From contig NW_027362766.1 of assembly GCF_046119375.1 (NCBI RefSeq), positions 11,718,001 to 11,782,000 on the forward strand: a DNA stretch of 64,000 nucleotides. Reading direction: 5' to 3'. How positions within the stretch are numbered: position 1 is the first letter of the stretch; every line of letters starts with the position of its first letter. Origin of the DNA: Phyllobates terribilis. Its lineage: Eukaryota. The notes under the pieces are model-generated. The model was not told the origin of the DNA and did no database searches. It worked only from the letters and a program-made list of their open reading frames with translations. Both the position numbers and the translations under genes were made by a program. Shown here one piece after another: positions 52,063-64,000 of the stretch.

Positions 52063-54425
52063 GCTCCATCATATTTACTCTTACGGGCAGCGGTGCCCCA
52101 TCATATTTACTCTTACGGGCAGCGGTGCTCCATCATATTTACTCTTACGAGCAGCGGTGCCCCATCATATTTACTCTTATGGGCAGCGGTGCCCCATCAT
52201 ATTTACTCTTACGAGCAGCGGTGCTCCATCATATTTACTCTTACAGGCAGAGGTGCCCCATCATATTTACTCTTACGGGCAGCGGTGCCCCATCATATTT
52301 ACTCTTACGAGCAGCGGTGCCCCATCATATTTACTCTTACGGGCAGAAGTGCCCCATCATATTTACTCTTACGGGCAGCGGTGCCCCATCATATTTACTC
52401 TTACGGGCAGCGGTGCCCCATCATATTTACTCTTATGGGCAGCGGTGCTCCATCATATTTACTCTTATGGGCAGCGGTGCTCCATCATATTTACTCTTAT
52501 GGGCAGCGGTGCTCCATCATATTTACTCTTACGGGCAGCGGTGCCCAATCATATTTACTCTTATGGGCAGCGGAGCTCCATCATATTTACTCTTACGGGC
52601 AGCGGTGCCCCATCATATTTACTCTTACGGGCAGCGGTGCCCCATCATATTTACTCTTACGGGCAGCGGTGCCCCATCATATTTACTCTGCGGGCAGCGG
52701 TGCCCCATCATATTTACTCTTACGGGCAGTGGTGCCCCATCATATTTACTCTTACGGGCAGCAGTGCCCCATCATATTTACTCTTACGGGCAGCGGTGCC
52801 CCATCATATTTACTCTTATGGGCAGCGGTGCTCCATCATATTTACTCTTATGGGCAGCGGTGCTCCATCATATTTACTCTTATGGGCAGTGGTGCCCAAT
52901 CATATTTACTCTTATGGGCAGCGGTGCTCCATCATATTTACTCTTATGGGCAGCGGTGCTCCATCATATTTACTCTTACGGGCAGCGGTGCCCCATCATA
53001 TTTACTCTTACGGGCAGCGGTGCCCCATCATATTTACTCTGCGGGCAGCGGTGCCCCATCATATTTACTCTTACGGGCAGCGGTGCCCCATCATATTTAC
53101 TCTTACGGGCAGCGGTTCCCCATCGTATTTACTCTTACGGGCAGCGGTGCCCCATCATATTTACTCTTATGGGCAGCGGTGCTCCATCATATTTACTCTT
53201 ACGGGCAGCGGTGCCCCATCATATTTACTCTTACGGGCAGCGGTGCCCCATCATATTTACTCTTACGGACAGCGGTGCCTCATCATATTTACTGTTATGG
53301 GCAGCGGTGCTCCATCATATTTACTCTTATGGGCAGCGGTGCCCCATCATATTTACTCTTACGGGCAGCGGTGCCCCATCATATTTACTCTTATGGGCAG
53401 CGGTGCTCCATCATATTTACTCTTACGGGCAGCGGTGCCCCATCATATTTACTCTTACGGGCAGCGGTGCCCCATCATATTTACTCTTACGGGCAGCGGT
53501 GCCCCATCATATTTACTCTTACGGGCAGCGGTGCCCCATCATATTTACTCTGCGGGCAGCGGTGCCCCATCATATTTACTCTTACGGGCAGCGGTGCCCC
53601 ATCATATTTACTCTGCGGGCAGCGGTGCCCCATCATATTTACTCTTACGGGCAGTGGTGCCCCATCATATTTACTCTTACGGGCAGTGGTGCCCCATCAT
53701 ATTTACTCTGCGGGCAGCGGTGCCCCATCATATTTACTCTTACGGGCAGCGGTGCCCCATCATATTTACTCTTACGGGCAGTGGTGCCCCATCATATTTA
53801 CTCTTACGGGCAGCGATGCCCCATCATATTTACTCTTACGGGCAGCGGTGCCCCATCATATTTACTCTTACGGGCAGCGATGCCCCATCATATTTACTCT
53901 TACGGGCAGCGGTGCCCCATCATATTTACTCTTACGGGCAGCGGTGCCCCATCATATTTACTCTTACGAGCAGCGGTGCCCCATCATATTCACTCTGCGG
54001 GCAGCGGTGCCCCACCATATTTACTCTTACGGGCAGCGGTGCCCCATCATATTTACTCTTACGGGCAGCGGTGCCCCATCATACTTACTCTTACGGGCAG
54101 CGGTGCCCCATCATATTTACTCTTACAGGCAGCGGTGCCCCATCATATTTACTCTTACGGGCAGCGGTGCCCCATCATATTTACTCTTATGGGCAGCGGT
54201 GCCCCATCATATTTACTCTTACGAGCAGCGGTGCTCCATCATATTTACTCTTACGGGCAGAGGTGCCCCATCATATTTACTCTTACGGGCAGCGGTGCCC
54301 CATCATATTTACTCTTACGAGCAGCGGTGCCCCATCATATTTACTCTTACGGGCAGCGGTGCCCCATCATACTTACTCTTACGGGCAGCGGTGCCCCATC
54401 ATATTTACTCTTACAGGCAGCGGTG
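52063..54425. repeat. 32-bp satellite (CCATCATATTTACTCTTACGGGCAGCGGTGCC), ~74 units
   Basis: Periodic array with recurrent 29-bp deletion variants; explains the 778-892 aa ORFs. Confidence 0.97.
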
Positions 54426-56830: not shown

Positions 56831-57633
56831 TCAGCTGCTCTCACAGAAAAAGGTATTACACGCTACGGTCAAAGATGCCACCAAAATAACAAATTCTTGA
56901 AAGTCCACCTCCCCGTCTCCATTCTCATCTAATTCCTTCATGATCTTGTCCACCGTACCTGCATCTTTCTGGGTCTGTAAGAAAACAGAGTGGATAAAAG
57001 AACGATAATCAAGGTAATTATTGTCAAAATTTGTGTACTGATAGGATTAGTTTCATTTGTATTGAAAGGGACATGGACTCTGATATCCATAGCTTACATA
57101 GATGTTAGTTAATTTTTAGACATCAACACATGCAGACACAGATAAACCAGTACTTTCTATCAGTCATGTCACCGAAAGCACAATTGGGTGGTTTTAGCCC
57201 TACTATAATATCACATGCGGATGTGGACCATCGGGAGGAACAGTTGTCAGTCAAACAAACATTTGCCCAAAACCTGAAGTGTATAGTTGTGCAAGTTCTG
57301 AAGTTAAAAAAAAACAATATAAACAAGCAAATCATGTGGAACCATACATATCCCTTCCTTATTGACATACAGGCTTTCTGACATTACCAAACCACTCAGA
57401 AGCGTCCAAGAAATTACTTTTCCTTTGACCGACATCATCTAACCTGATCCTACTACCATGTATCCTCCACATGAAGATAAGTTGTCTCTTACCTCCAGAT
57501 ACTCCCCAAGTTCATTCTGTAGCAGATCCTTCAGCTCTCTTCGACTCAACTTGAACTTATCACCTTCCCGGGCAGAATATGTGTGGAAAACATTGATAAG
57601 GGTCTCCATGGCTCCTTCAAGCTGCGAAGACAT
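56831..57633 (-). CDS. s100a1: Protein S100-A1, two coding exons (57633-57493, 56974-56831), 94 aa
   Basis: MSSQLEGAMETLINVFHTYSAREGDKFKLSRRELKDLLQNELGEYLE/TQKDAGTVDKIMKELDENGDGEVDFQEFVILVASLTVACNTFFCESS*; pseudo EF-hand plus canonical EF-hand DENGDGEVDFQE; GT-AG intron; synteny with CHTOP. Confidence 0.93.
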
Positions 57634-57702
57634 CTCTGAAGTATTCTGGTTGATGAACTGCACACGCTGAGAAGAGAACATGATTGCAGCACAGTATAGA
57701 AA

Positions 57703-58110
57703 AATATTTCGATTTGAGAGTCCTCAGTGGTTTATACCTTTTAATGGCTAACTGAAAAGATGGTAACAAATTGCAAGCTTTCGAGACTACTCAGGTCTCT
57801 TCATCAGGCTGGCTAACTGAAAAGATGGTAACAAATTGCAAGCTTTCGAGACTACTCAGGTCTCTTCATCAGGCTGGCTAACTGAAAAGATGGTAACAAA
57901 TTGCAAGCTTTCGAGACTACGCAGGTCTCTTCATCAGGCATAGCATACCCCAAAATCTGAAGAGTCACATATTTATACACAATATATGTGACTCTTCAGA
58001 TTGCCTGATGAAGAGACCTGAGTAGTCTCAAAAGCTTGCAATTTGTTACCATCTTTTCAGTTAGCCATTAAAAGGTATCAACCACTGAGGACTCTCAAAT
58101 GTAAATATTT
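57703..58110. mobile_element. Penelope-derived fold-back element (inverted pLTR-like arms)
   Basis: Arms ~57703-57809 and ~58003-58110 are reverse complements; a perfect 19-bp inner hairpin spans 57954-58002; carries hammerhead cores. Confidence 0.8.
57746..57939 (-). ncRNA. Three tandem 65-bp minimal hammerhead-ribozyme motifs
   Basis: Each unit on minus: CUGAUGA-A-GAGAC(loop)GUCUC-GAAA-GC-UU-GCAAU; units start at 57746, 57811 and 57876 on the + strand. Confidence 0.7.
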
Positions 58111-58851
58111 TTCTATCTACTGGCTAACACGGTACAAGAATATATATTTTCCCTATATAAGAACAGTATAGAAACTCAAGTAGGTGAGATTGAAGATGCT
58201 GCACAGTTCTAAACAGGAAAATGGTTAATCGAAAGGAATGTTTTGGTAGTGGAGATGAGAGAAGAGATGGCGCCAATGGAAAAGTCTTGGTACATGGGTT
58301 GGAGATATAATTATTAAGAAGGGTGAGAAAGCCTTGGTAATAAATTAAAATGTCTTGGCTAACTATATAAGTAAGAGAGGAGAAAGATCAGTAAGAGATT
58401 AATATGTTCTGTCAGCTGATTGAGAGTAAAAGTGGCCATTAGATGAATGTCAACCAAACTGGATATTTTCGGCCAATCTCATATCTGCCGCCGAAGGGGT
58501 TTGGCATCTTGTTACTCCTTTCTCCACTTATAAATAAATGTAAGCTCATCTGAACCGAGCATGCATGCGTATGAGAGGATTGTCAAGAGATATAGCGAAC
58601 AATTGCTTTCCGACAACTATATACAGTGTTTAGCCAGCTGAAGTTAGGTTATGGTATCACCTTCAAAGGATAAGTACTAGTTATGTCTAAGTGTCGGATG
58701 GGATGTAAAGGATGGATTTCTCTTGGAAAGGAAAGGCATATGATATGTAAGAATGAGATATCAGAAAGGATAAGATAATAGTTTGGAAAAGAAAATCACG
58801 ATTCAAAGGTGAGGACAGGAGTGGTTGGGTATAACTGAGGAATAATCTCAC

Positions 58852-58930
58852 CGGACAGTGACCTCTCAGCGGCAGCTATGACTCCTCCACAGCCGGTCGT
58901 GTAGACTAGTCTGTTGTCCCAGTGCCGGTG
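58852..58930 (-). other. Possible S100A1 non-coding exon 1
   Basis: CCG|GTGAGA donor at 58851 in a short GC-richer patch; S100 genes normally have a non-coding first exon. TSS not determined. Confidence 0.3.
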
Positions 58931-59392: not shown

Positions 59393-60877
59393 CAAAAGGA
59401 ATCTGAAAGCTGAGGAGCAGCCCCATAGACATACAAGCAAAAGGAATCTGAAAGCTGAGGAGCAGCCCCATAGACATACACGCAAAAGGAATCTGAAAGC
59501 TGAGGAGCAGCCCCATAGACATACACGCAAAAGGAATCTGAAAGCTGAGGAGTAGCCCCATAGACATACAAGCAAAATGAATCTGAAAGCTGAGGAGCAG
59601 CCCCATAGACATACATGCAAAAGGAATCTGAAAGCTGAGGAGCAGCCCCATAGACATACACGTAAAAGGAATCTGAAAGCTGAGGAGCAGCCCCATAGAC
59701 ATACACGCAAAAGGAATCTGAAAGCTTAGGAGCAGCCCCATAGACATACACGCAAAAGGAATCTGAAAACTGAGGAGCAGCCCCATAGACATACACGCAA
59801 AACGAATCTGAAAGCTGAGGAACAGCCCCATAGACATACATGCAAAAGGAATCTGAAAGCTGAGGAGCAGCCCCATAGACATACATGCAAAAGGAATCTG
59901 AAAGCTGAGGAGCAGCCCCATAGACATACACGCAAAAGGAATCTGAAAGCTGAGGAGCAGCCCCATAGACATACGCGCAAAAGGAATCTGAAAGCTGAGG
60001 AGCAGCCCCATAGACATACACGTAAAAGGAATCTGAAAGCTGAGGAGCAGCCCCATAGACATACACGCAAAAGGAATCTGAAAGCTTAGGAGCAGCCCCA
60101 TAGACATACACGCAAAAGGAATCTGAAAACTGAGGAGCAGCCCCATAGACATACACGCAAAACGAATCTGAAAGCTGAGGAACAGCCCCATAGACATACA
60201 TGCAAAAGGAATCTGAAAGCTGAGGAGCAGCCCCATAGACATACATGCAAAAGGAATCTGAAAGCTGAGGAGCAGCCCCATAGACATACACGCAAAAGGA
60301 ATCTGAAAGCTGAGGAGCAGCCCCATAGACATACGCGCAAAAGGAATCTGAAAGCTGAGGAGCAGCCCCATAGACATACACGCAAAAGGAATCTGAAAGC
60401 TGAGGAGCAGCCCCATAGACATACAAGCAAAAGGAATCTGAAAGCTGAGGAGCAGCCCCATAGACATACGCGCAAAAGGAATCTGAAAGCTGAGGAGCAG
60501 CCCCATAGACATACATGCAAAAGGAATCTGAAAGCTGAGGAGCAGCCCCATAGACATACATGCAAAAGGAATCTGAAAGCTGAGGAGCAGCCCCATAGAC
60601 ATACACGCAAAAGGAATCTGAAAGCTGAGGAGTAGCCCCATAGACATACACGCAAAATGAATCTGAAAGCTGAGGAGCAGCCCCATAGACATACACGCAA
60701 AAGGAATCTGAAAGCTGAGGAGCAGCCCCATAGACATACATGCAAAAGGAATCTGAAAGCTGAGGAGCAGCCCCATAGACATACAAGCAAAAGGAATCTG
60801 AAAGCTGAGGAGCAGCCCCATAGACATACACGCAAAAGGAATCTGAAAGCTGAGGAGCAGCCCCATAGACATACACG
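59393..60877. repeat. 45-bp satellite x33 (CAAAAGGAATCTGAAAGCTGAGGAGCAGCCCCATAGACATACACG)
   Basis: 1485 bp = 33 units; a unit length divisible by 3 gives 15-aa periodic ORFs. Confidence 0.98.
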
Positions 60878-61221
60878 CTGTGCTACTGAGCTGTTTATCT
60901 AGGTGTCCTTCCACACATGTCAGATCTGACACAGACATAAGGCTTAATTAGATGGACGAGCGACTTCCAGTTTAGGAGTCTTGATCGACTACATACATAG
61001 TTACACAGGTTGAAAAAGAGACTAAAATCATGGACTAATTTCACATTCACTACGTAACAATTTTACATATATTTTTTGGTGTGTTTTCCTAATTCATTGT
61101 CCCTAAAATGAATAGAAAAGGTTATTATTCCCCATAAACTTTGCTTTTGTGGCCAGCACAATGATATTTTGAAATGTATCTATTTAAGAATATTCACAAA
61201 ATATTCAGTGCTGAATACTCG

Positions 61222-61386: not shown

Positions 61387-63216
61387 GGCTGTGTGCCCAC
61401 TATGCGTTTTTTAAGCGTTTCCGCTGCGGCAATTCCGCTGCAGAAACGCTTGGTAGAAGGCCTGCCATGTCCCCCAATGGTAATCCGCATGTGCTGTGCA
61501 CATGCTGCGGAAATTTCCACTGCGGATTATCATTGCGGAAAAAAACGCAGCACAATCAATTATTTTGCGGAATCGCAGCGTTTTCGCCGCCATTGACTTG
61601 CATTGGATCACGTGACATCCGCATCACGGCATCTGCAGATGCGGATACCATGCGTTTCAATGTGCGGATGGTACCCGGGTGTGGAGGACAGGAGACTCTC
61701 CTCCAGTCTCGGGTACCATAGAACCTGTAAAAAAAAGAATAAAATAAGAAATATACATTATACTCACCTTCTGATGGCCCCCGGTGTCCTTAGAGATGCG
61801 TCCTGGCTTGCCGGCAGCTCGCGATGGTCTAAAAAGGACCTGCCGTGACGTCATTTAGTCATGCGACCACTGACGTTGGCGGTAGCGTGACCCGTCACAT
61901 GACTAAATGACGTCATGGCAGGTCCTTTTTAGACCATCGCGAGCTGCCAGCAAGCCAGGACGCATCGGAAAAGGACACCGGGGGCCATCAGAAGGTAAGT
62001 ATAATATTTATTTGTTATTTTTTACCATTCTTTCGGTCACACTATATATGTCGTTTGCATGGATTTATATAGTGTGACCAAGTTGTCAAGCACTTTCCAA
62101 GTGATGCTAAAATCGCTTGTCAACCCACATGCGGAAATGCAAGTGAAGAATGCTTCACATCCGCGTGTGCAATCCGCGTGCGCAATCCGCGTGCCCAATC
62201 CGCATGTACAATCCGCATGCACAATCCGCGTGTGCAATCCGCATGTACAATCCGCATGCACAATCCGCGTGCGCAATCCGCGTGCGCAATCCGCATGTAC
62301 AATCCGCATGCACAATCCGCGTGTGCAATCCGCATGTGCAATCAGCATGCACAATCCGCATGCACAATCCGCATGTACAATCCGCATGCACAATCCGCGT
62401 GTGCAATCCGCGTGCGCAATCCGCATGCACAATCCGCAGGTACAATCCGCATGTACAATCCGCATGCACAATCCTCGTGTACAATCCGCGTGCGCAATCC
62501 ACGTGCCCAATCCGCATGTACAATCCGCATGCGCAATCCGCGTGTGCAATCCGCGTGTGCAATCCGCGTGCCCAATCCGCATGTACAATCCGCATGCACA
62601 ATCCGCGTGCGCAATCCGCATGTACAATCCGCGTGTGCAATCCGCGTGTGCAATCCGCATGTACAATCCACATGCACAATCTGCGTGTGCAATCCGCATG
62701 TACAATCCGCATGCACAATCCGCGTGTGCAATCCGCATGCACAATTCGCATGTACAATCCGCATGCACAATCCGCGTGCGCAATCCGCATGTACAATCCG
62801 CATGCACAATCCGCGTGTGCAATCCGCATGCGCAATCCACATGTACAATCAGCATGCACAATCCGCATGTACAATCCGCATGCACAATCCGTGTGTGCAA
62901 TCCGCGTGCGCAATCCGCATGCACAATCCGCATGCACAATCCGCATGCACAATCCGCATGTACAATCCTCATGTACAATCCGCATGTACAATCCGCATGC
63001 ACAATCCGCATGCACAATCCTCATGTACAATCCGTGTGTGCAATCCGCGTGCGCAATCCGCATGTACAATCCGCATGCACAATCCGCATGCACAATCCGC
63101 ATGTACAATCCGCATGTACAATCCGCATGCACAATCCGCGTGTGTTTTTTCTGCCAGGGAGATGCAGAAACGCTCAGGAAAAATCCGGAGCATTTCAGCA
63201 TCGTGTGCACATAGCC
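61387..63216 (-). mobile_element. Composite MITE: TIRs, central palindrome and 13/14-bp satellite
   Basis: GGCTGTGTGCCCAC ... GTGTGCACATAGCC|TTAA; internal palindrome 61758-62004; satellite GTACAATCCGCAT at ~62159-63142. Confidence 0.8.
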
Positions 63217-63399: not shown

Positions 63400-64000
63400 A
63401 GAGGGGTGTGGGGATGGCTACTAACCTTATGGAGTTGTGCACCTCTGCACAACCCCAGTGTAAAGCTCCACAAGCTCCGCTCTGTTGGTGGCTGTCATCT
63501 GCTTTCAGCGGCCTTCACAGGTCCCGATCTCACGTGGTGGGTCACGTGATCAGGTTTGTTGCGCATACCGCCGAGATGGACGCCCAGCTTCACCACCACT
63601 CCCGGCAGCGCTCCGGAGGGGTTAGGGAGGCGCAGCTTGGAAACCAAGGTAGTAACTACTTAATTAACTTCATCCCACAGGTGAATGAACAGGTAAATGG
63701 AGGCAGCTCTACCGCACCCCAACAGGGGGAAAAAGACAATCAGTGAATGTGAATAGCGGTACCAGAGCGCCAATAACAGGGCAAAAATGAAATTAAAATA
63801 ACTGGTTTATTAACACACACAACGCGTTTCGGTGGACAAGGCCACCTTCATCAGGTGTGAAAAGCAGCAAACAAATGATCCTTATATACATTTGATCAGA
63901 TATACAATTGCTTCGGGGCTAAATACAGAGTAATACCTCTATATTAACCCCTTTAGTTCATTTATGCCCAATAGAGTAAACAGGATTTTTATAAATTAAT
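63400..64000 (-). mobile_element. Penelope-like element pLTR fragment (left boundary approximate)
   Basis: On minus: TATATAA (~63885), a hammerhead motif, then AATAAA immediately downstream. Confidence 0.6.
63816..63859 (-). ncRNA. Minimal type I hammerhead ribozyme
   Basis: CACAC-CUGAUGA-A-GGUGG(CCUUGU)CCACC-GAAA-C(GC)G-UU|GUGUG: 5-bp stem I, 5-bp stem II, palindromic ACGCGU stem III. Confidence 0.8.

What the first reader, a model, noticed from the sequence alone, without database searches (positions are those of the whole stretch)
57746..57939. Tandem triplet of hammerhead-ribozyme cores, sense-oriented in the S100A1 upstream intron
Seen: a 65-bp unit is repeated three times head-to-tail, 17-210 bp further upstream than the acceptor's flanking ~60 nt, i.e. 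about 80-270 bp upstream of the S100A1 exon that starts at 57666. On the S100A1 (minus) strand each unit has an intact catalytic core: CUGAUGA, a 5-bp stem II, GAAA and a palindromic AGCU stem III with a CUU cleavage triplet. The mirror copy on the + arm (58003-58042) has a perfect stem I (AUUGC/GCAAU) but its catalytic G12 is mutated (AAAA). Known: minimal hammerheads in Penelope-like elements and in newt satellite 2 have unstable stem III and cleave well as dimers or tandem multimers. Inference: local amplification created the tandem geometry needed for cleavage in the pre-mRNA, which could tune S100A1 output or release small linear or circular RNAs. Caveat: stem I of the sense copies is only 2-3 bp, so activity may be weak.
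Basis: partly seen in the sequence, partly recalled or inferred. Interest (0 to 1): 0.8.

Follow-up and report, generated by a model that had tools for sequence, protein, structure and literature searches.

The report
Penelope retroelement hammerheads in S100A1 intron
The three tandem hammerhead-like units are real. They belong to a broken, head-to-head double insertion of a very abundant Penelope-like retrotransposon in intron 1 of S100A1, a known kind of transposon ribozyme motif with no sign of a role for the host gene.

Summary
Three 65-bp units lie head to tail at 57745-57939. On the S100A1 strand each has CUGAUGA, one extra A, a 5-bp helix II, GAAA, a palindromic AGCU and a CUU cleavage triplet. 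The + arm copy (58003-58042) has G12 changed to A, at the unit's only CpG. Spliced transcript contigs join 58852 to 57666, so the array lies in intron 1, in sense.

The units are not a local invention. The core occurs at least 1758 times in this 10.6-Gb genome. It lies about 155 nt from the shared 3' end of a 5'-truncated retroelement. Longer copies of that element encode a reverse transcriptase and a GIY-YIG-type endonuclease, so it is a Penelope-like element (PLE). The motif matches the published "minimal hammerhead" of metazoan PLEs feature by feature.

The locus (57703-58159, 15-bp target duplication) is a typical PLE head-to-head inverted pair.

The same 65-nt junction occurs at only three other loci. 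All three are independent inverted PLE insertions, and this is unexplained.

Nothing supports regulation of S100A1. The insertion looks recent, the active double-hammerhead fold is disfavoured, and a -255 kcal/mol hairpin competes with it. Self-cleavage could not be tested.

The scan has noted similar PLE hammerhead hairpins elsewhere in this genome.

The parts
58852..58915 (-). S100A1 exon 1 (5' untranslated). Only the 3' part is mapped; the donor GT is at 58851-58850.
   Evidence: A spliced contig (X19 record 9) runs 58915->58852 and then straight on to 57666->57493. X1 record 1 agrees. GTGAG follows 58852 on the minus strand.
57667..58851 (-). S100A1 intron 1 (GT..AG), which holds the whole insertion
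57493..57666 (-). S100A1 exon 2, with the ATG at 57633
   Evidence: Contigs with 0 differences. The 47-aa translation is closest to S100A1 among non-chimeric chains, E 1.7e-16.
57688..57702 (.). Left copy of the 15-bp target-site duplication (AGCACAGTATAGAAA)
   Evidence: the repeat finder family D2, 93% identical to 58160-58174
58160..58174 (.). Right copy of the target-site duplication (AGAACAGTATAGAAA)
57703..57983 (-). Arm A: a 5'-truncated PLE 3' region in the S100A1 sense. It carries the three units and ends about 42 nt short of the element's normal 3' end (no 'tail').
   Evidence: Alignment to 30+ family copies
57745..57939 (-). Array of three 65-nt units, each with an intact minimal hammerhead core
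57775..57807 (-). Hammerhead core of the 3'-most unit (CUGAUGA to U17). Predicted cleavage lies between 57775 and 57774.
   Evidence: Descriptor hit; sequence
57840..57872 (-). Hammerhead core of the middle unit. Predicted cleavage lies between 57840 and 57839.
57905..57937 (-). Hammerhead core of the 5'-most unit. It is the only one still preceded by the family's spacer strand of helix I (57940-57953). Predicted cleavage lies between 57905 and 57904.
57954..58002 (.). A perfect 19-bp 'central hairpin'. It is not a separate element; it is the point where the two inverted arms meet (arm A ends at 57983, arm B starts at 57984).
   Evidence: the repeat finder I4. Typical family copies carry only one half of it.
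57984..58159 (+). Arm B: a 5'-truncated PLE 3' region on the opposite strand. It has one unit, lacks the 14-nt spacer, and keeps the full 3' end including the ~42-nt tail (...TTTTCCCTAT).
58003..58042 (+). Mirror hammerhead copy with G12 changed to A at 58030 (CpG to CpA). It gained an 8-bp helix I by accident when the spacer was lost.
   Evidence: CpG variant frequencies

Best explanation
[quoted passage not shown] The element encodes a reverse transcriptase and a GIY-YIG endonuclease, joined by a Neptune-type CX4CxxC linker. It entered S100A1 intron 1 by target-primed reverse transcription, 36 nt upstream of the acceptor, and made a 15-bp target duplication. Each arm carries the element's own minimal type I hammerhead. 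This motif has no helix III hairpin and can only be completed when two copies pair through the palindromic AGCU (a double hammerhead), cutting after CUU. In the element's life cycle the motif is thought to process multimeric or read-through PLE transcripts. That role, and cleavage itself, are inferred from the literature and not shown here. On arm A the 65-nt stretch holding the hammerhead is present three times. The same junction at three other inverted PLE insertions suggests it arises from template switching by the PLE polymerase or at the palindrome. The unit's two ends sit at the base of a predicted stem, which fits that idea, but this step is inference. In the S100A1 pre-mRNA the insertion is most likely a neutral passenger. 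One sense unit would be locked in a long hairpin with the antisense arm, and the two spare units could at best form a weak double hammerhead.
For: Family size: 1758 exact core matches on both strands, 0 for the reversed control, and at least 1561 candidates by DNA search.
Retroelement behaviour: copies share one 3' end, and their 5' ends lie anywhere from 117 to more than 1645 nt upstream.
Coding capacity: longer copies hit RVT_1 at E 1.8e-13. Their C-terminus reads CX4CxxC, then VVY-..C..C..-YVGET, then ..HH.H, the PLE-type GIY-YIG with two cysteines between GIY and YIG (definition in PMC8557442). The nearest ESM Atlas clusters combine RVT_1, HTH_animal and GIY-YIG at score 0.97.
PLE hallmarks at this locus: an inverted 5'-truncated partner, a ~42-nt tail on one end only, and a variable-length target duplication, as described in PMC8557442. 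About 13 minus-then-plus pairs appear among the first 100 listed copies.
Motif: it shows every non-descriptor feature listed for metazoan PLE min-HHRs in PMC4209133: a nucleotide between A9 and G10.1, a G10.1-C11.1 pair, a palindromic 15.2-16.2, and a longer helix II.
Helix II is kept in propagating lineages. At pair 10.4-11.4 the counts are about 1350 A-U (estimated as 77% of 1758), 343 G.U, about 46 compensated G-C, and only 25 A.C mismatches.
Position in the gene: the array is intronic and in sense.
Against: Pfam's GIY-YIG model does not hit the endonuclease region, so that domain rests on motifs and Atlas neighbours.
No Rfam hammerhead model matches at E<=10. The same is true of the independent minimal hammerhead at 63.8 kb, so this is a blind spot of the models and not evidence against.
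No full-length element or direct pseudo-LTR pair was characterised.
Self-cleavage was not tested. Only assembled contigs were available, and these cannot show RNA ends.
The identical array junction at four independent loci, always on one arm of an inverted pair, is not really explained.
Confidence: 0.85

Rival explanations
1. A host-serving intronic ribozyme. The tandem triplet self-cleaves the S100A1 pre-mRNA. This would tune mRNA output or release small linear or circular 65-nt RNAs.
For: The array is in sense and inside intron 1. Three cores are intact and adjacent. Dimeric and trimeric PLE min-HHR constructs do cleave weakly in vitro (PMC4209133). Two of the three units are left unpaired by the big hairpin.
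Against: The insertion looks recent: the arms are 96% complementary, the units 98-100% identical, and the target duplication has 1 mismatch in 15. The family has at least 1758 copies. The same array occurs at three unrelated loci. The best fold containing the double hammerhead is -27.9 kcal/mol against an MFE of -43.1 for the array, and the array is no more stable than shuffles, z 0.14. Internal units have a 2-bp helix I and lack the family's spacer strand. Correctly spliced S100A1 mRNA is present. The published in vitro activity is low and mostly seen at non-physiological Mg2+.
Confidence: 0.05
2. A retrozyme-like or satellite-like hammerhead repeat that spreads as a small circular RNA. The 65-nt unit would be the monomer.
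For: The copies lie head to tail with one hammerhead per unit. The junction is identical at four loci, as rolling-circle copying of one circle would give. An isolated unit folds as a rod with its ends adjacent.
Against: There are only four loci with 3-4 units each. All sit inside PLE insertions and continue seamlessly into PLE flanks. No free-standing arrays exist. Plant retrozyme circRNAs are 600-1000 nt (PMC6155905), and from memory animal ones are about 170-400 nt, so 65 nt would be far below known sizes. A first circle needs two cleavage sites, which means a tandem must already exist.
Confidence: 0.03
3. Not a working ribozyme at all. The motif would be a conserved piece of PLE sequence with another role (for example RT recognition), or none. 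Any effect of this locus on the host would come from the ~190-bp RNA hairpin (editing, Dicer, polymerase pausing).
For: There is no Rfam hit. The hammerhead fold is not the predicted MFE in typical or tandem copies. PMC8557442 states that the function of HHRs in EN+ PLEs is unclear and that clades lacking them proliferate well. The whole insertion folds at -255.5 kcal/mol, z -26. Variation at the essential core position A14 (25 copies) is similar to that at the mismatch control (25), so individual copies are not under constraint.
Against: The full set of hammerhead features, including the G10.1-C11.1 pair, the palindromic 15.2-16.2 and NUH, is present and absent from random sequence. One helix II pair is compensated in a propagating subfamily. 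An unrelated PLE family in the same window has the same architecture with a different helix II and a different palindrome.
Confidence: 0.07

Closest known systems
Minimal hammerhead ribozymes (min-HHR) of metazoan Penelope-like elements (Cervera & de la Pena 2014, PMC4209133)
   Same: It has the CUGAUGA and GAAA boxes, an unpaired nucleotide between A9 and G10.1, and a G10.1-C11.1 pair opening a 5-bp helix II. It has no helix III hairpin but a palindromic AGCU, a U17 cleavage site and a poorly defined helix I. It lies in the terminal region of a PLE, occurs in thousands of mostly truncated copies, and is often paired on opposite strands 100-700 bp apart. The paper reports about 9000 such motifs in Xenopus tropicalis.
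   Different: Here the 65-nt stretch around the motif is itself repeated 3-4 times head to tail at four loci. The paper describes tandem hammerheads about 3 kb apart (whole-element tandems), not micro-arrays. Activity of this family is untested.
Penelope-like elements, EN+ clades (Penelope/Poseidon, Neptune; Craig et al. 2021, PMC8557442)
   Same: RT followed by a C-terminal GIY-YIG with the CCHH arrangement. A CX2-5CxxC linker as in Neptune. Strong 5' truncation, an inverted 5'-truncated partner copy, a 30-40-bp tail at one end only, and a variable target duplication.
   Different: Clade membership was not tested by phylogeny. No intact full-length copy or direct pseudo-LTR was examined.
Newt satellite 2 and Schistosoma Sm-alpha type I hammerheads; animal retrozymes
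   Same: Type I topology, an unstable helix III, and expected activity only as a double hammerhead between tandem units.
   Different: Those have a real (if short) helix III hairpin, a 6-bp helix I with loop-loop contacts, much longer units than 65 nt, and large arrays. Here the unit is 65 nt, there are 3-4 copies, and the array sits inside a PLE fragment.
Conserved intronic hammerheads of amniotes (RECK, CTCL, DTNB; reviewed in PMC6155905)
   Same: A hammerhead in sense inside an intron of a protein-coding gene.
   Different: Those are single, stable, canonical type I motifs conserved at orthologous positions across birds, mammals or reptiles. This one is a recent transposon insertion of the minimal type with no evidence of conservation.

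Membership tests
PLE minimal hammerhead (min-HHR) | Catalytic boxes CUGANGA and GAAA in order | tested here: met
   All three sense units have them. The + arm copy fails, with AAAA and G12A at 58030.
PLE minimal hammerhead (min-HHR) | One unpaired nucleotide between A9 and G10.1 | tested here: met
   An A is present in every copy examined. The feature is listed in PMC4209133.
PLE minimal hammerhead (min-HHR) | Helix II of 4-8 bp opening with G10.1-C11.1 and kept by compensatory change | tested here: met
   GAGAC/GUCUC, 5 bp. At pair 10.4-11.4: 343 G.U, about 46 G-C and only 25 A.C. Only this one pair covaries; pair 10.2-11.2 shows no double changes.
PLE minimal hammerhead (min-HHR) | No helix III hairpin; palindromic 15.1-16.1 that can pair between two copies; NUH triplet | tested here: met
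   AGCU followed by U17. A nested double-hammerhead structure can be drawn and scores -9.6 kcal/mol.
PLE minimal hammerhead (min-HHR) | Helix I of about 4-5 bp | tested here: not met
   Internal array units have only GC/GC. The first unit has GC/GC plus GGUA/UACC across an internal loop. Typical family copies have GC/GC plus GUGGUA/UACCAU. The + arm copy has 8 bp.
PLE minimal hammerhead (min-HHR) | Lies in the terminal repeat or 3' region of a PLE | tested here: met
   It lies about 155 nt from the shared 3' end, downstream of the RT/EN ORF.
PLE minimal hammerhead (min-HHR) | Mg2+-dependent self-cleavage after H17 | not testable with these tools
   Only assembled contigs were available, and they cannot show RNA ends.
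Rfam hammerhead families (type I/II/III, HH9, HH10) | Covariance-model score | tested here: not met
   No hammerhead match at E<=10 on 3 kb, 341 nt or 91 nt. The unrelated min-HHR at 63821-63854 is missed too, so the models do not cover this class.
Penelope-like element (EN+) | Reverse transcriptase domain | tested here: met
   RVT_1 at E 1.8e-13 and 1.4e-6 in two longer copies.
Penelope-like element (EN+) | C-terminal GIY-YIG endonuclease with two Cys between GIY and YIG, and downstream His residues | tested here: inconclusive
   The motifs are visible in translation and Atlas neighbours carry PF01541. Pfam itself gives no hit.
Penelope-like element (EN+) | 5' truncation, inverted 5'-truncated partner, 30-40-bp tail at one end, variable target duplication | tested here: met
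   description in PMC8557442.
Retrozyme / hammerhead satellite | Many free-standing tandem units that give unit-length circular RNA | tested here: not met
   Only four arrays of 3-4 units exist, all embedded in PLE insertions. circRNA was not testable.
Domesticated intronic hammerhead (RECK/CTCL type) | Conservation at the orthologous intron position across species | not testable with these tools
   No related genomes were available. Arm and unit identities of 96-100% argue for a recent insertion.

The most novel reading that the evidence does not exclude
The 65-nt multimers may not be random slippage. They could be a recurrent product of PLE integration. The telomerase-related PLE polymerase would copy the hammerhead module again and again by switching template at the base of the module's stem, or it would copy a hammerhead-processed small circle. 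Inverted PLE insertions would then occasionally seed self-cleaving multimers in host introns such as S100A1 intron 1.
Probability: 0.1. Interest if true: 0.55.

Novelty: new member of a known kind. Interest (0 to 1): 0.22.

Why it matters
As it stands, this is routine repeat annotation. One of thousands of Penelope-like hammerhead motifs in a large vertebrate genome happens to sit in sense in S100A1 intron 1. It matters in two ways. First, as a caution: an 'intact ribozyme in an intron' in such genomes is by default transposon cargo, and Rfam models do not flag this class. Second, there is one small open point. The same 65-nt hammerhead module is multiplied with an identical junction at four independent inverted insertions, which may say something about how the PLE polymerase switches templates.

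Tried and rejected
1. Rfam hammerhead models gave no hit at E<=10. I do not count this as evidence against, because a second, independent min-HHR in the window is missed as well. The microRNA hits only reflect the inverted repeat.

2. RNA ends at the predicted cleavage sites could not be read. Only Logan contigs were available and they cannot show ends. The single read-laying run did map the splice junction.

3. I tested whether the family's 5' ends pile up at the predicted cleavage site, which would be a genomic trace of in vivo cleavage. Forty copies have a non-T before GCAAU. Of 30 examined, 19 are point mutants, a few are small deletions, and about 5-6 have an arm starting exactly at GCAAU. 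A control position gave 25 variants. The result is inconclusive.

4. I tested microhomology slippage between the two TAGCC words as the origin of the array. That predicts a 61-nt period and the junction GTTAGCCTGATGA. No such junction exists, so this is rejected.

5. I considered the 'central hairpin' as a separate functional element. This is rejected: it is simply the meeting point of the two arms.

6. A>G differences at 57769/57770 in transcript contigs are not editing. They are the GCAACCUG subfamily variant of the repeat.

7. Pfam GIY-YIG on the C-terminal 188 aa gave no hit even at E<=10.

8. The supplement of PMC4209133, which would hold the Xenopus motif sequences, is not held.

Full report
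**1. The observation**

Tandem Repeats Finder reports one array at 57745-57939 with period 65, 3.0 copies and 99% matches. The repeat finder gives the three copies at 100, 100 and 98% identity. On the minus strand each unit reads GC / CUGAUGA / A / GAGAC / CUGAGUA / GUCUC / GAAA / GCU / U, followed by GCAAUUUG. That gives both catalytic boxes, one extra A after A9, a 5-bp helix II that opens with G-C, a self-complementary AGCU in place of helix III, and a CUU triplet.

I wrote a descriptor for this minimal architecture. It finds exactly these three units, plus one unrelated motif at 63821-63854 (minus strand), in the 64-kb window. It finds nothing in 200 first-order Markov randomisations.

**2. 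The gene context**

The 47-aa translation of 57493-57633 (minus strand) is closest to S100A1 among non-chimeric solved chains, at E 1.7e-16, ahead of S100Z and S100B. Transcript contigs with no differences cover 57493-57666. One of them (X19 record 9) continues without a break into 58852-58915, and X1 record 1 agrees. GTGAG follows 58852 on the minus strand.

Intron 1 is therefore 57667-58851, and transcription starts upstream of the array. The array is in sense inside the pre-mRNA. Spliced mRNA is present.

**3. What the sequence belongs to**

The locus is an inverted repeat. The arms at 57696-57809 and 58003-58116 are 96% complementary over 114 nt, and a perfect 19-bp hairpin sits between them.

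A DNA search of the window's own 10.6-Gb genome gave at least 1561 candidates. The exact 33-nt core, allowing Y-R at its one CpG, occurs 1758 times on both strands, against 0 for the reversed control.

Aligned copies share one 3' end (...TTTTCCCTAT). Their 5' ends begin anywhere from 117 to more than 1645 nt upstream. This is the signature of a 5'-truncated retroelement.

Four longer copies carry an open frame that hits RVT_1 at E 1.8e-13. Its C-terminus reads C-x4-C-x2-C, then VVY..C..C....YVGET, then HH.H. This is the arrangement that PMC8557442 gives as diagnostic for PLE endonucleases: two cysteines between GIY and YIG, with a CX2-5CxxC linker as in Neptune. Pfam's GIY-YIG model does not hit. 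The nearest ESM Atlas clusters combine RVT_1, HTH_animal and GIY-YIG at score 0.97.

I conclude that the family is a Penelope-like element. The hammerhead lies about 155 nt from its 3' end.

**4. Anatomy of this insertion**

A 15-bp direct repeat (57688-57702 and 58160-58174, one mismatch) brackets 57703-58159.

- Arm A (57703-57983, minus strand, S100A1 sense) runs from PLE sequence upstream of the hammerhead, through the 14-nt spacer and the three units. It ends at ...AAATATTTTTCTAT, about 42 nt short of the family's 3' end. Its end overlaps the target duplication by 7 nt.
- Arm B (57984-58159, plus strand) has one unit, has lost the spacer, and keeps the full 3' end.
- The 'central hairpin' is simply where the two arms meet. 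Typical copies carry only one half of it.

An inverted 5'-truncated partner copy and a 30-40-bp tail at only one end are described as typical of PLE insertions (PMC8557442). Among the first 100 listed core matches, about 13 minus-then-plus pairs lie 60 nt to 8 kb apart.

The G12A of arm B sits in the unit's only CpG. Of those 100 matches, 77 have CG, 13 CA and 10 TG, so this is ordinary CpG decay in a young family.

**5. Is the motif a hammerhead?**

PMC4209133 defines the metazoan PLE min-HHR. [quoted passage not shown] It also reports about 9000 such motifs in Xenopus tropicalis, and pairs on opposite strands 100-700 bp apart. The motif here has all of these features.

Within the family, helix II pair 10.4-11.4 shows these states (rest of the 31-mer exact):

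| State | Copies |
|---|---|
| A-U (majority) | about 1350 (estimate: 77% of 1758) |
| G.U wobble | 343 |
| G-C, compensated | about 46 of 51 double changes |
| A.C mismatch | 25 |

Pair-preserving variants have propagated and the mismatch has not. This is one covarying pair, and it may reflect only one or two events. Pair 10.2-11.2 shows no double changes.

A different PLE family at 63821-63854 has the same architecture with a different helix II (GGUGG/CCACC) and a different palindrome (ACGCGU).

Rfam finds neither motif at E<=10, so its models do not cover this class.

**6. Would it cut here?**

- In typical copies, helix I is GC/GC plus an internal loop plus GUGGUA/UACCAU. The upstream strand comes from the 14-nt spacer.
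- Internal units of the array have the previous unit's tail there instead, and keep only GC/GC.
- The first unit keeps GGUA/UACC.
- A nested double-hammerhead structure between two units can be drawn. It scores -9.6 kcal/mol on its own and -27.9 for the best fold containing it, against an MFE of -43.1 for the array. In that MFE the CUGAUGAAGAGA box pairs with UCUUUUCAGUUAG.
- The array alone is no more stable than shuffles, z 0.14.
- In the pre-mRNA sense the whole insertion folds into a -255.5 kcal/mol hairpin, z -26. This locks one sense unit to the antisense arm and loops out the other two.
- Published dimeric and trimeric PLE min-HHR constructs cleave only weakly.

Cleavage is possible but likely inefficient. 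It could not be tested, because only contigs were available.

**7. The array itself**

The junction ...CAGTTAGCCA|GCCTGATGA... occurs at only four loci in the genome:

| Locus | Units |
|---|---|
| This window (C6:11.78 Mb) | 3 |
| C3:651.06 Mb | 3 |
| C6:7.05 Mb | 4 |
| C10:130.29 Mb | 4, diverged |

A search allowing 0-8 nt at the junction found no other junction type.

The four loci have different flanks, different target duplications and different inversion points. In all four the array sits on one arm of an inverted pair, and in three of them the other arm has a single unit. In the fourth (C6:7.05 Mb) the other arm is cut off within the unit.

Slippage between the two TAGCC words would give a 61-nt period, and that is not seen. 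An isolated unit is predicted to fold with positions 3-14 paired to 50-62, so its two ends lie at the base of a stem. This would suit structure-guided template switching, but the fold is not significant (z 0.24). I regard the origin of the array as unexplained. The link to PLE insertions argues against a locus-specific, selected amplification.

**8. Verdict**

This is a known kind of object: the PLE minimal hammerhead, described in 2014. It sits in an ordinary truncated, inverted PLE insertion that landed in S100A1 intron 1. Earlier first-stage notes of this scan list many PLE hammerhead hairpins elsewhere in this genome. I reached the PLE reading before seeing them. The only mildly new point is the recurrent 65-nt micro-array.

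Noticed in passing
window 63821-63854 (minus strand): A second complete minimal hammerhead with a different sequence: CUGAUGA-A-GGUGG-CCUUGU-CCACC-GAAA-CGCG-U-U. It has a 6-nt palindrome ACGCGU and lies about 5 kb upstream of S100A1 exon 1. It is presumably from another PLE family. Rfam does not detect it.
   Followed up: partly
L031 (C3:651064012), L033 (C6:7049752), L038 (C10:130285495): These are the only other places in the genome with the same 65-nt tandem junction (3, 4 and 4 units). Each is an independent head-to-head PLE insertion with the array on one arm only. The origin of the identical junction is unexplained.
   Followed up: partly
L057, L058, L060, L069, L048 (position 1501 of each): Family copies whose forward arm begins exactly at the predicted hammerhead cleavage site (GCAAU...), several of them joined directly to an inverted arm. 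This could be a trace of reverse transcription of cleaved RNA. Enrichment over other positions could not be established.
   Followed up: partly
L045-L074: Among 19 point mutants at the cleavage nucleotide U17, 11 are U-to-G transversions, the one change that should abolish cleavage. Only 4 are U-to-C and 4 U-to-A. This may be a small propagating subfamily.
   Followed up: no
window 52066-54425, 59393-60878, 62159-63139: Three large minisatellites flank S100A1: 32 bp x 74, 45 bp x 33 and 13 bp x 75. They produce long spurious ORFs in all frames.
   Followed up: no
window 57696-58157 in runs X1, X2, X19, X22: Contigs of this PLE 3' region are very abundant, on both strands, in runs labelled with at least two organism codes. 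Word matches reach six organism codes, so the family is shared by related species and is probably transcribed.
   Followed up: no
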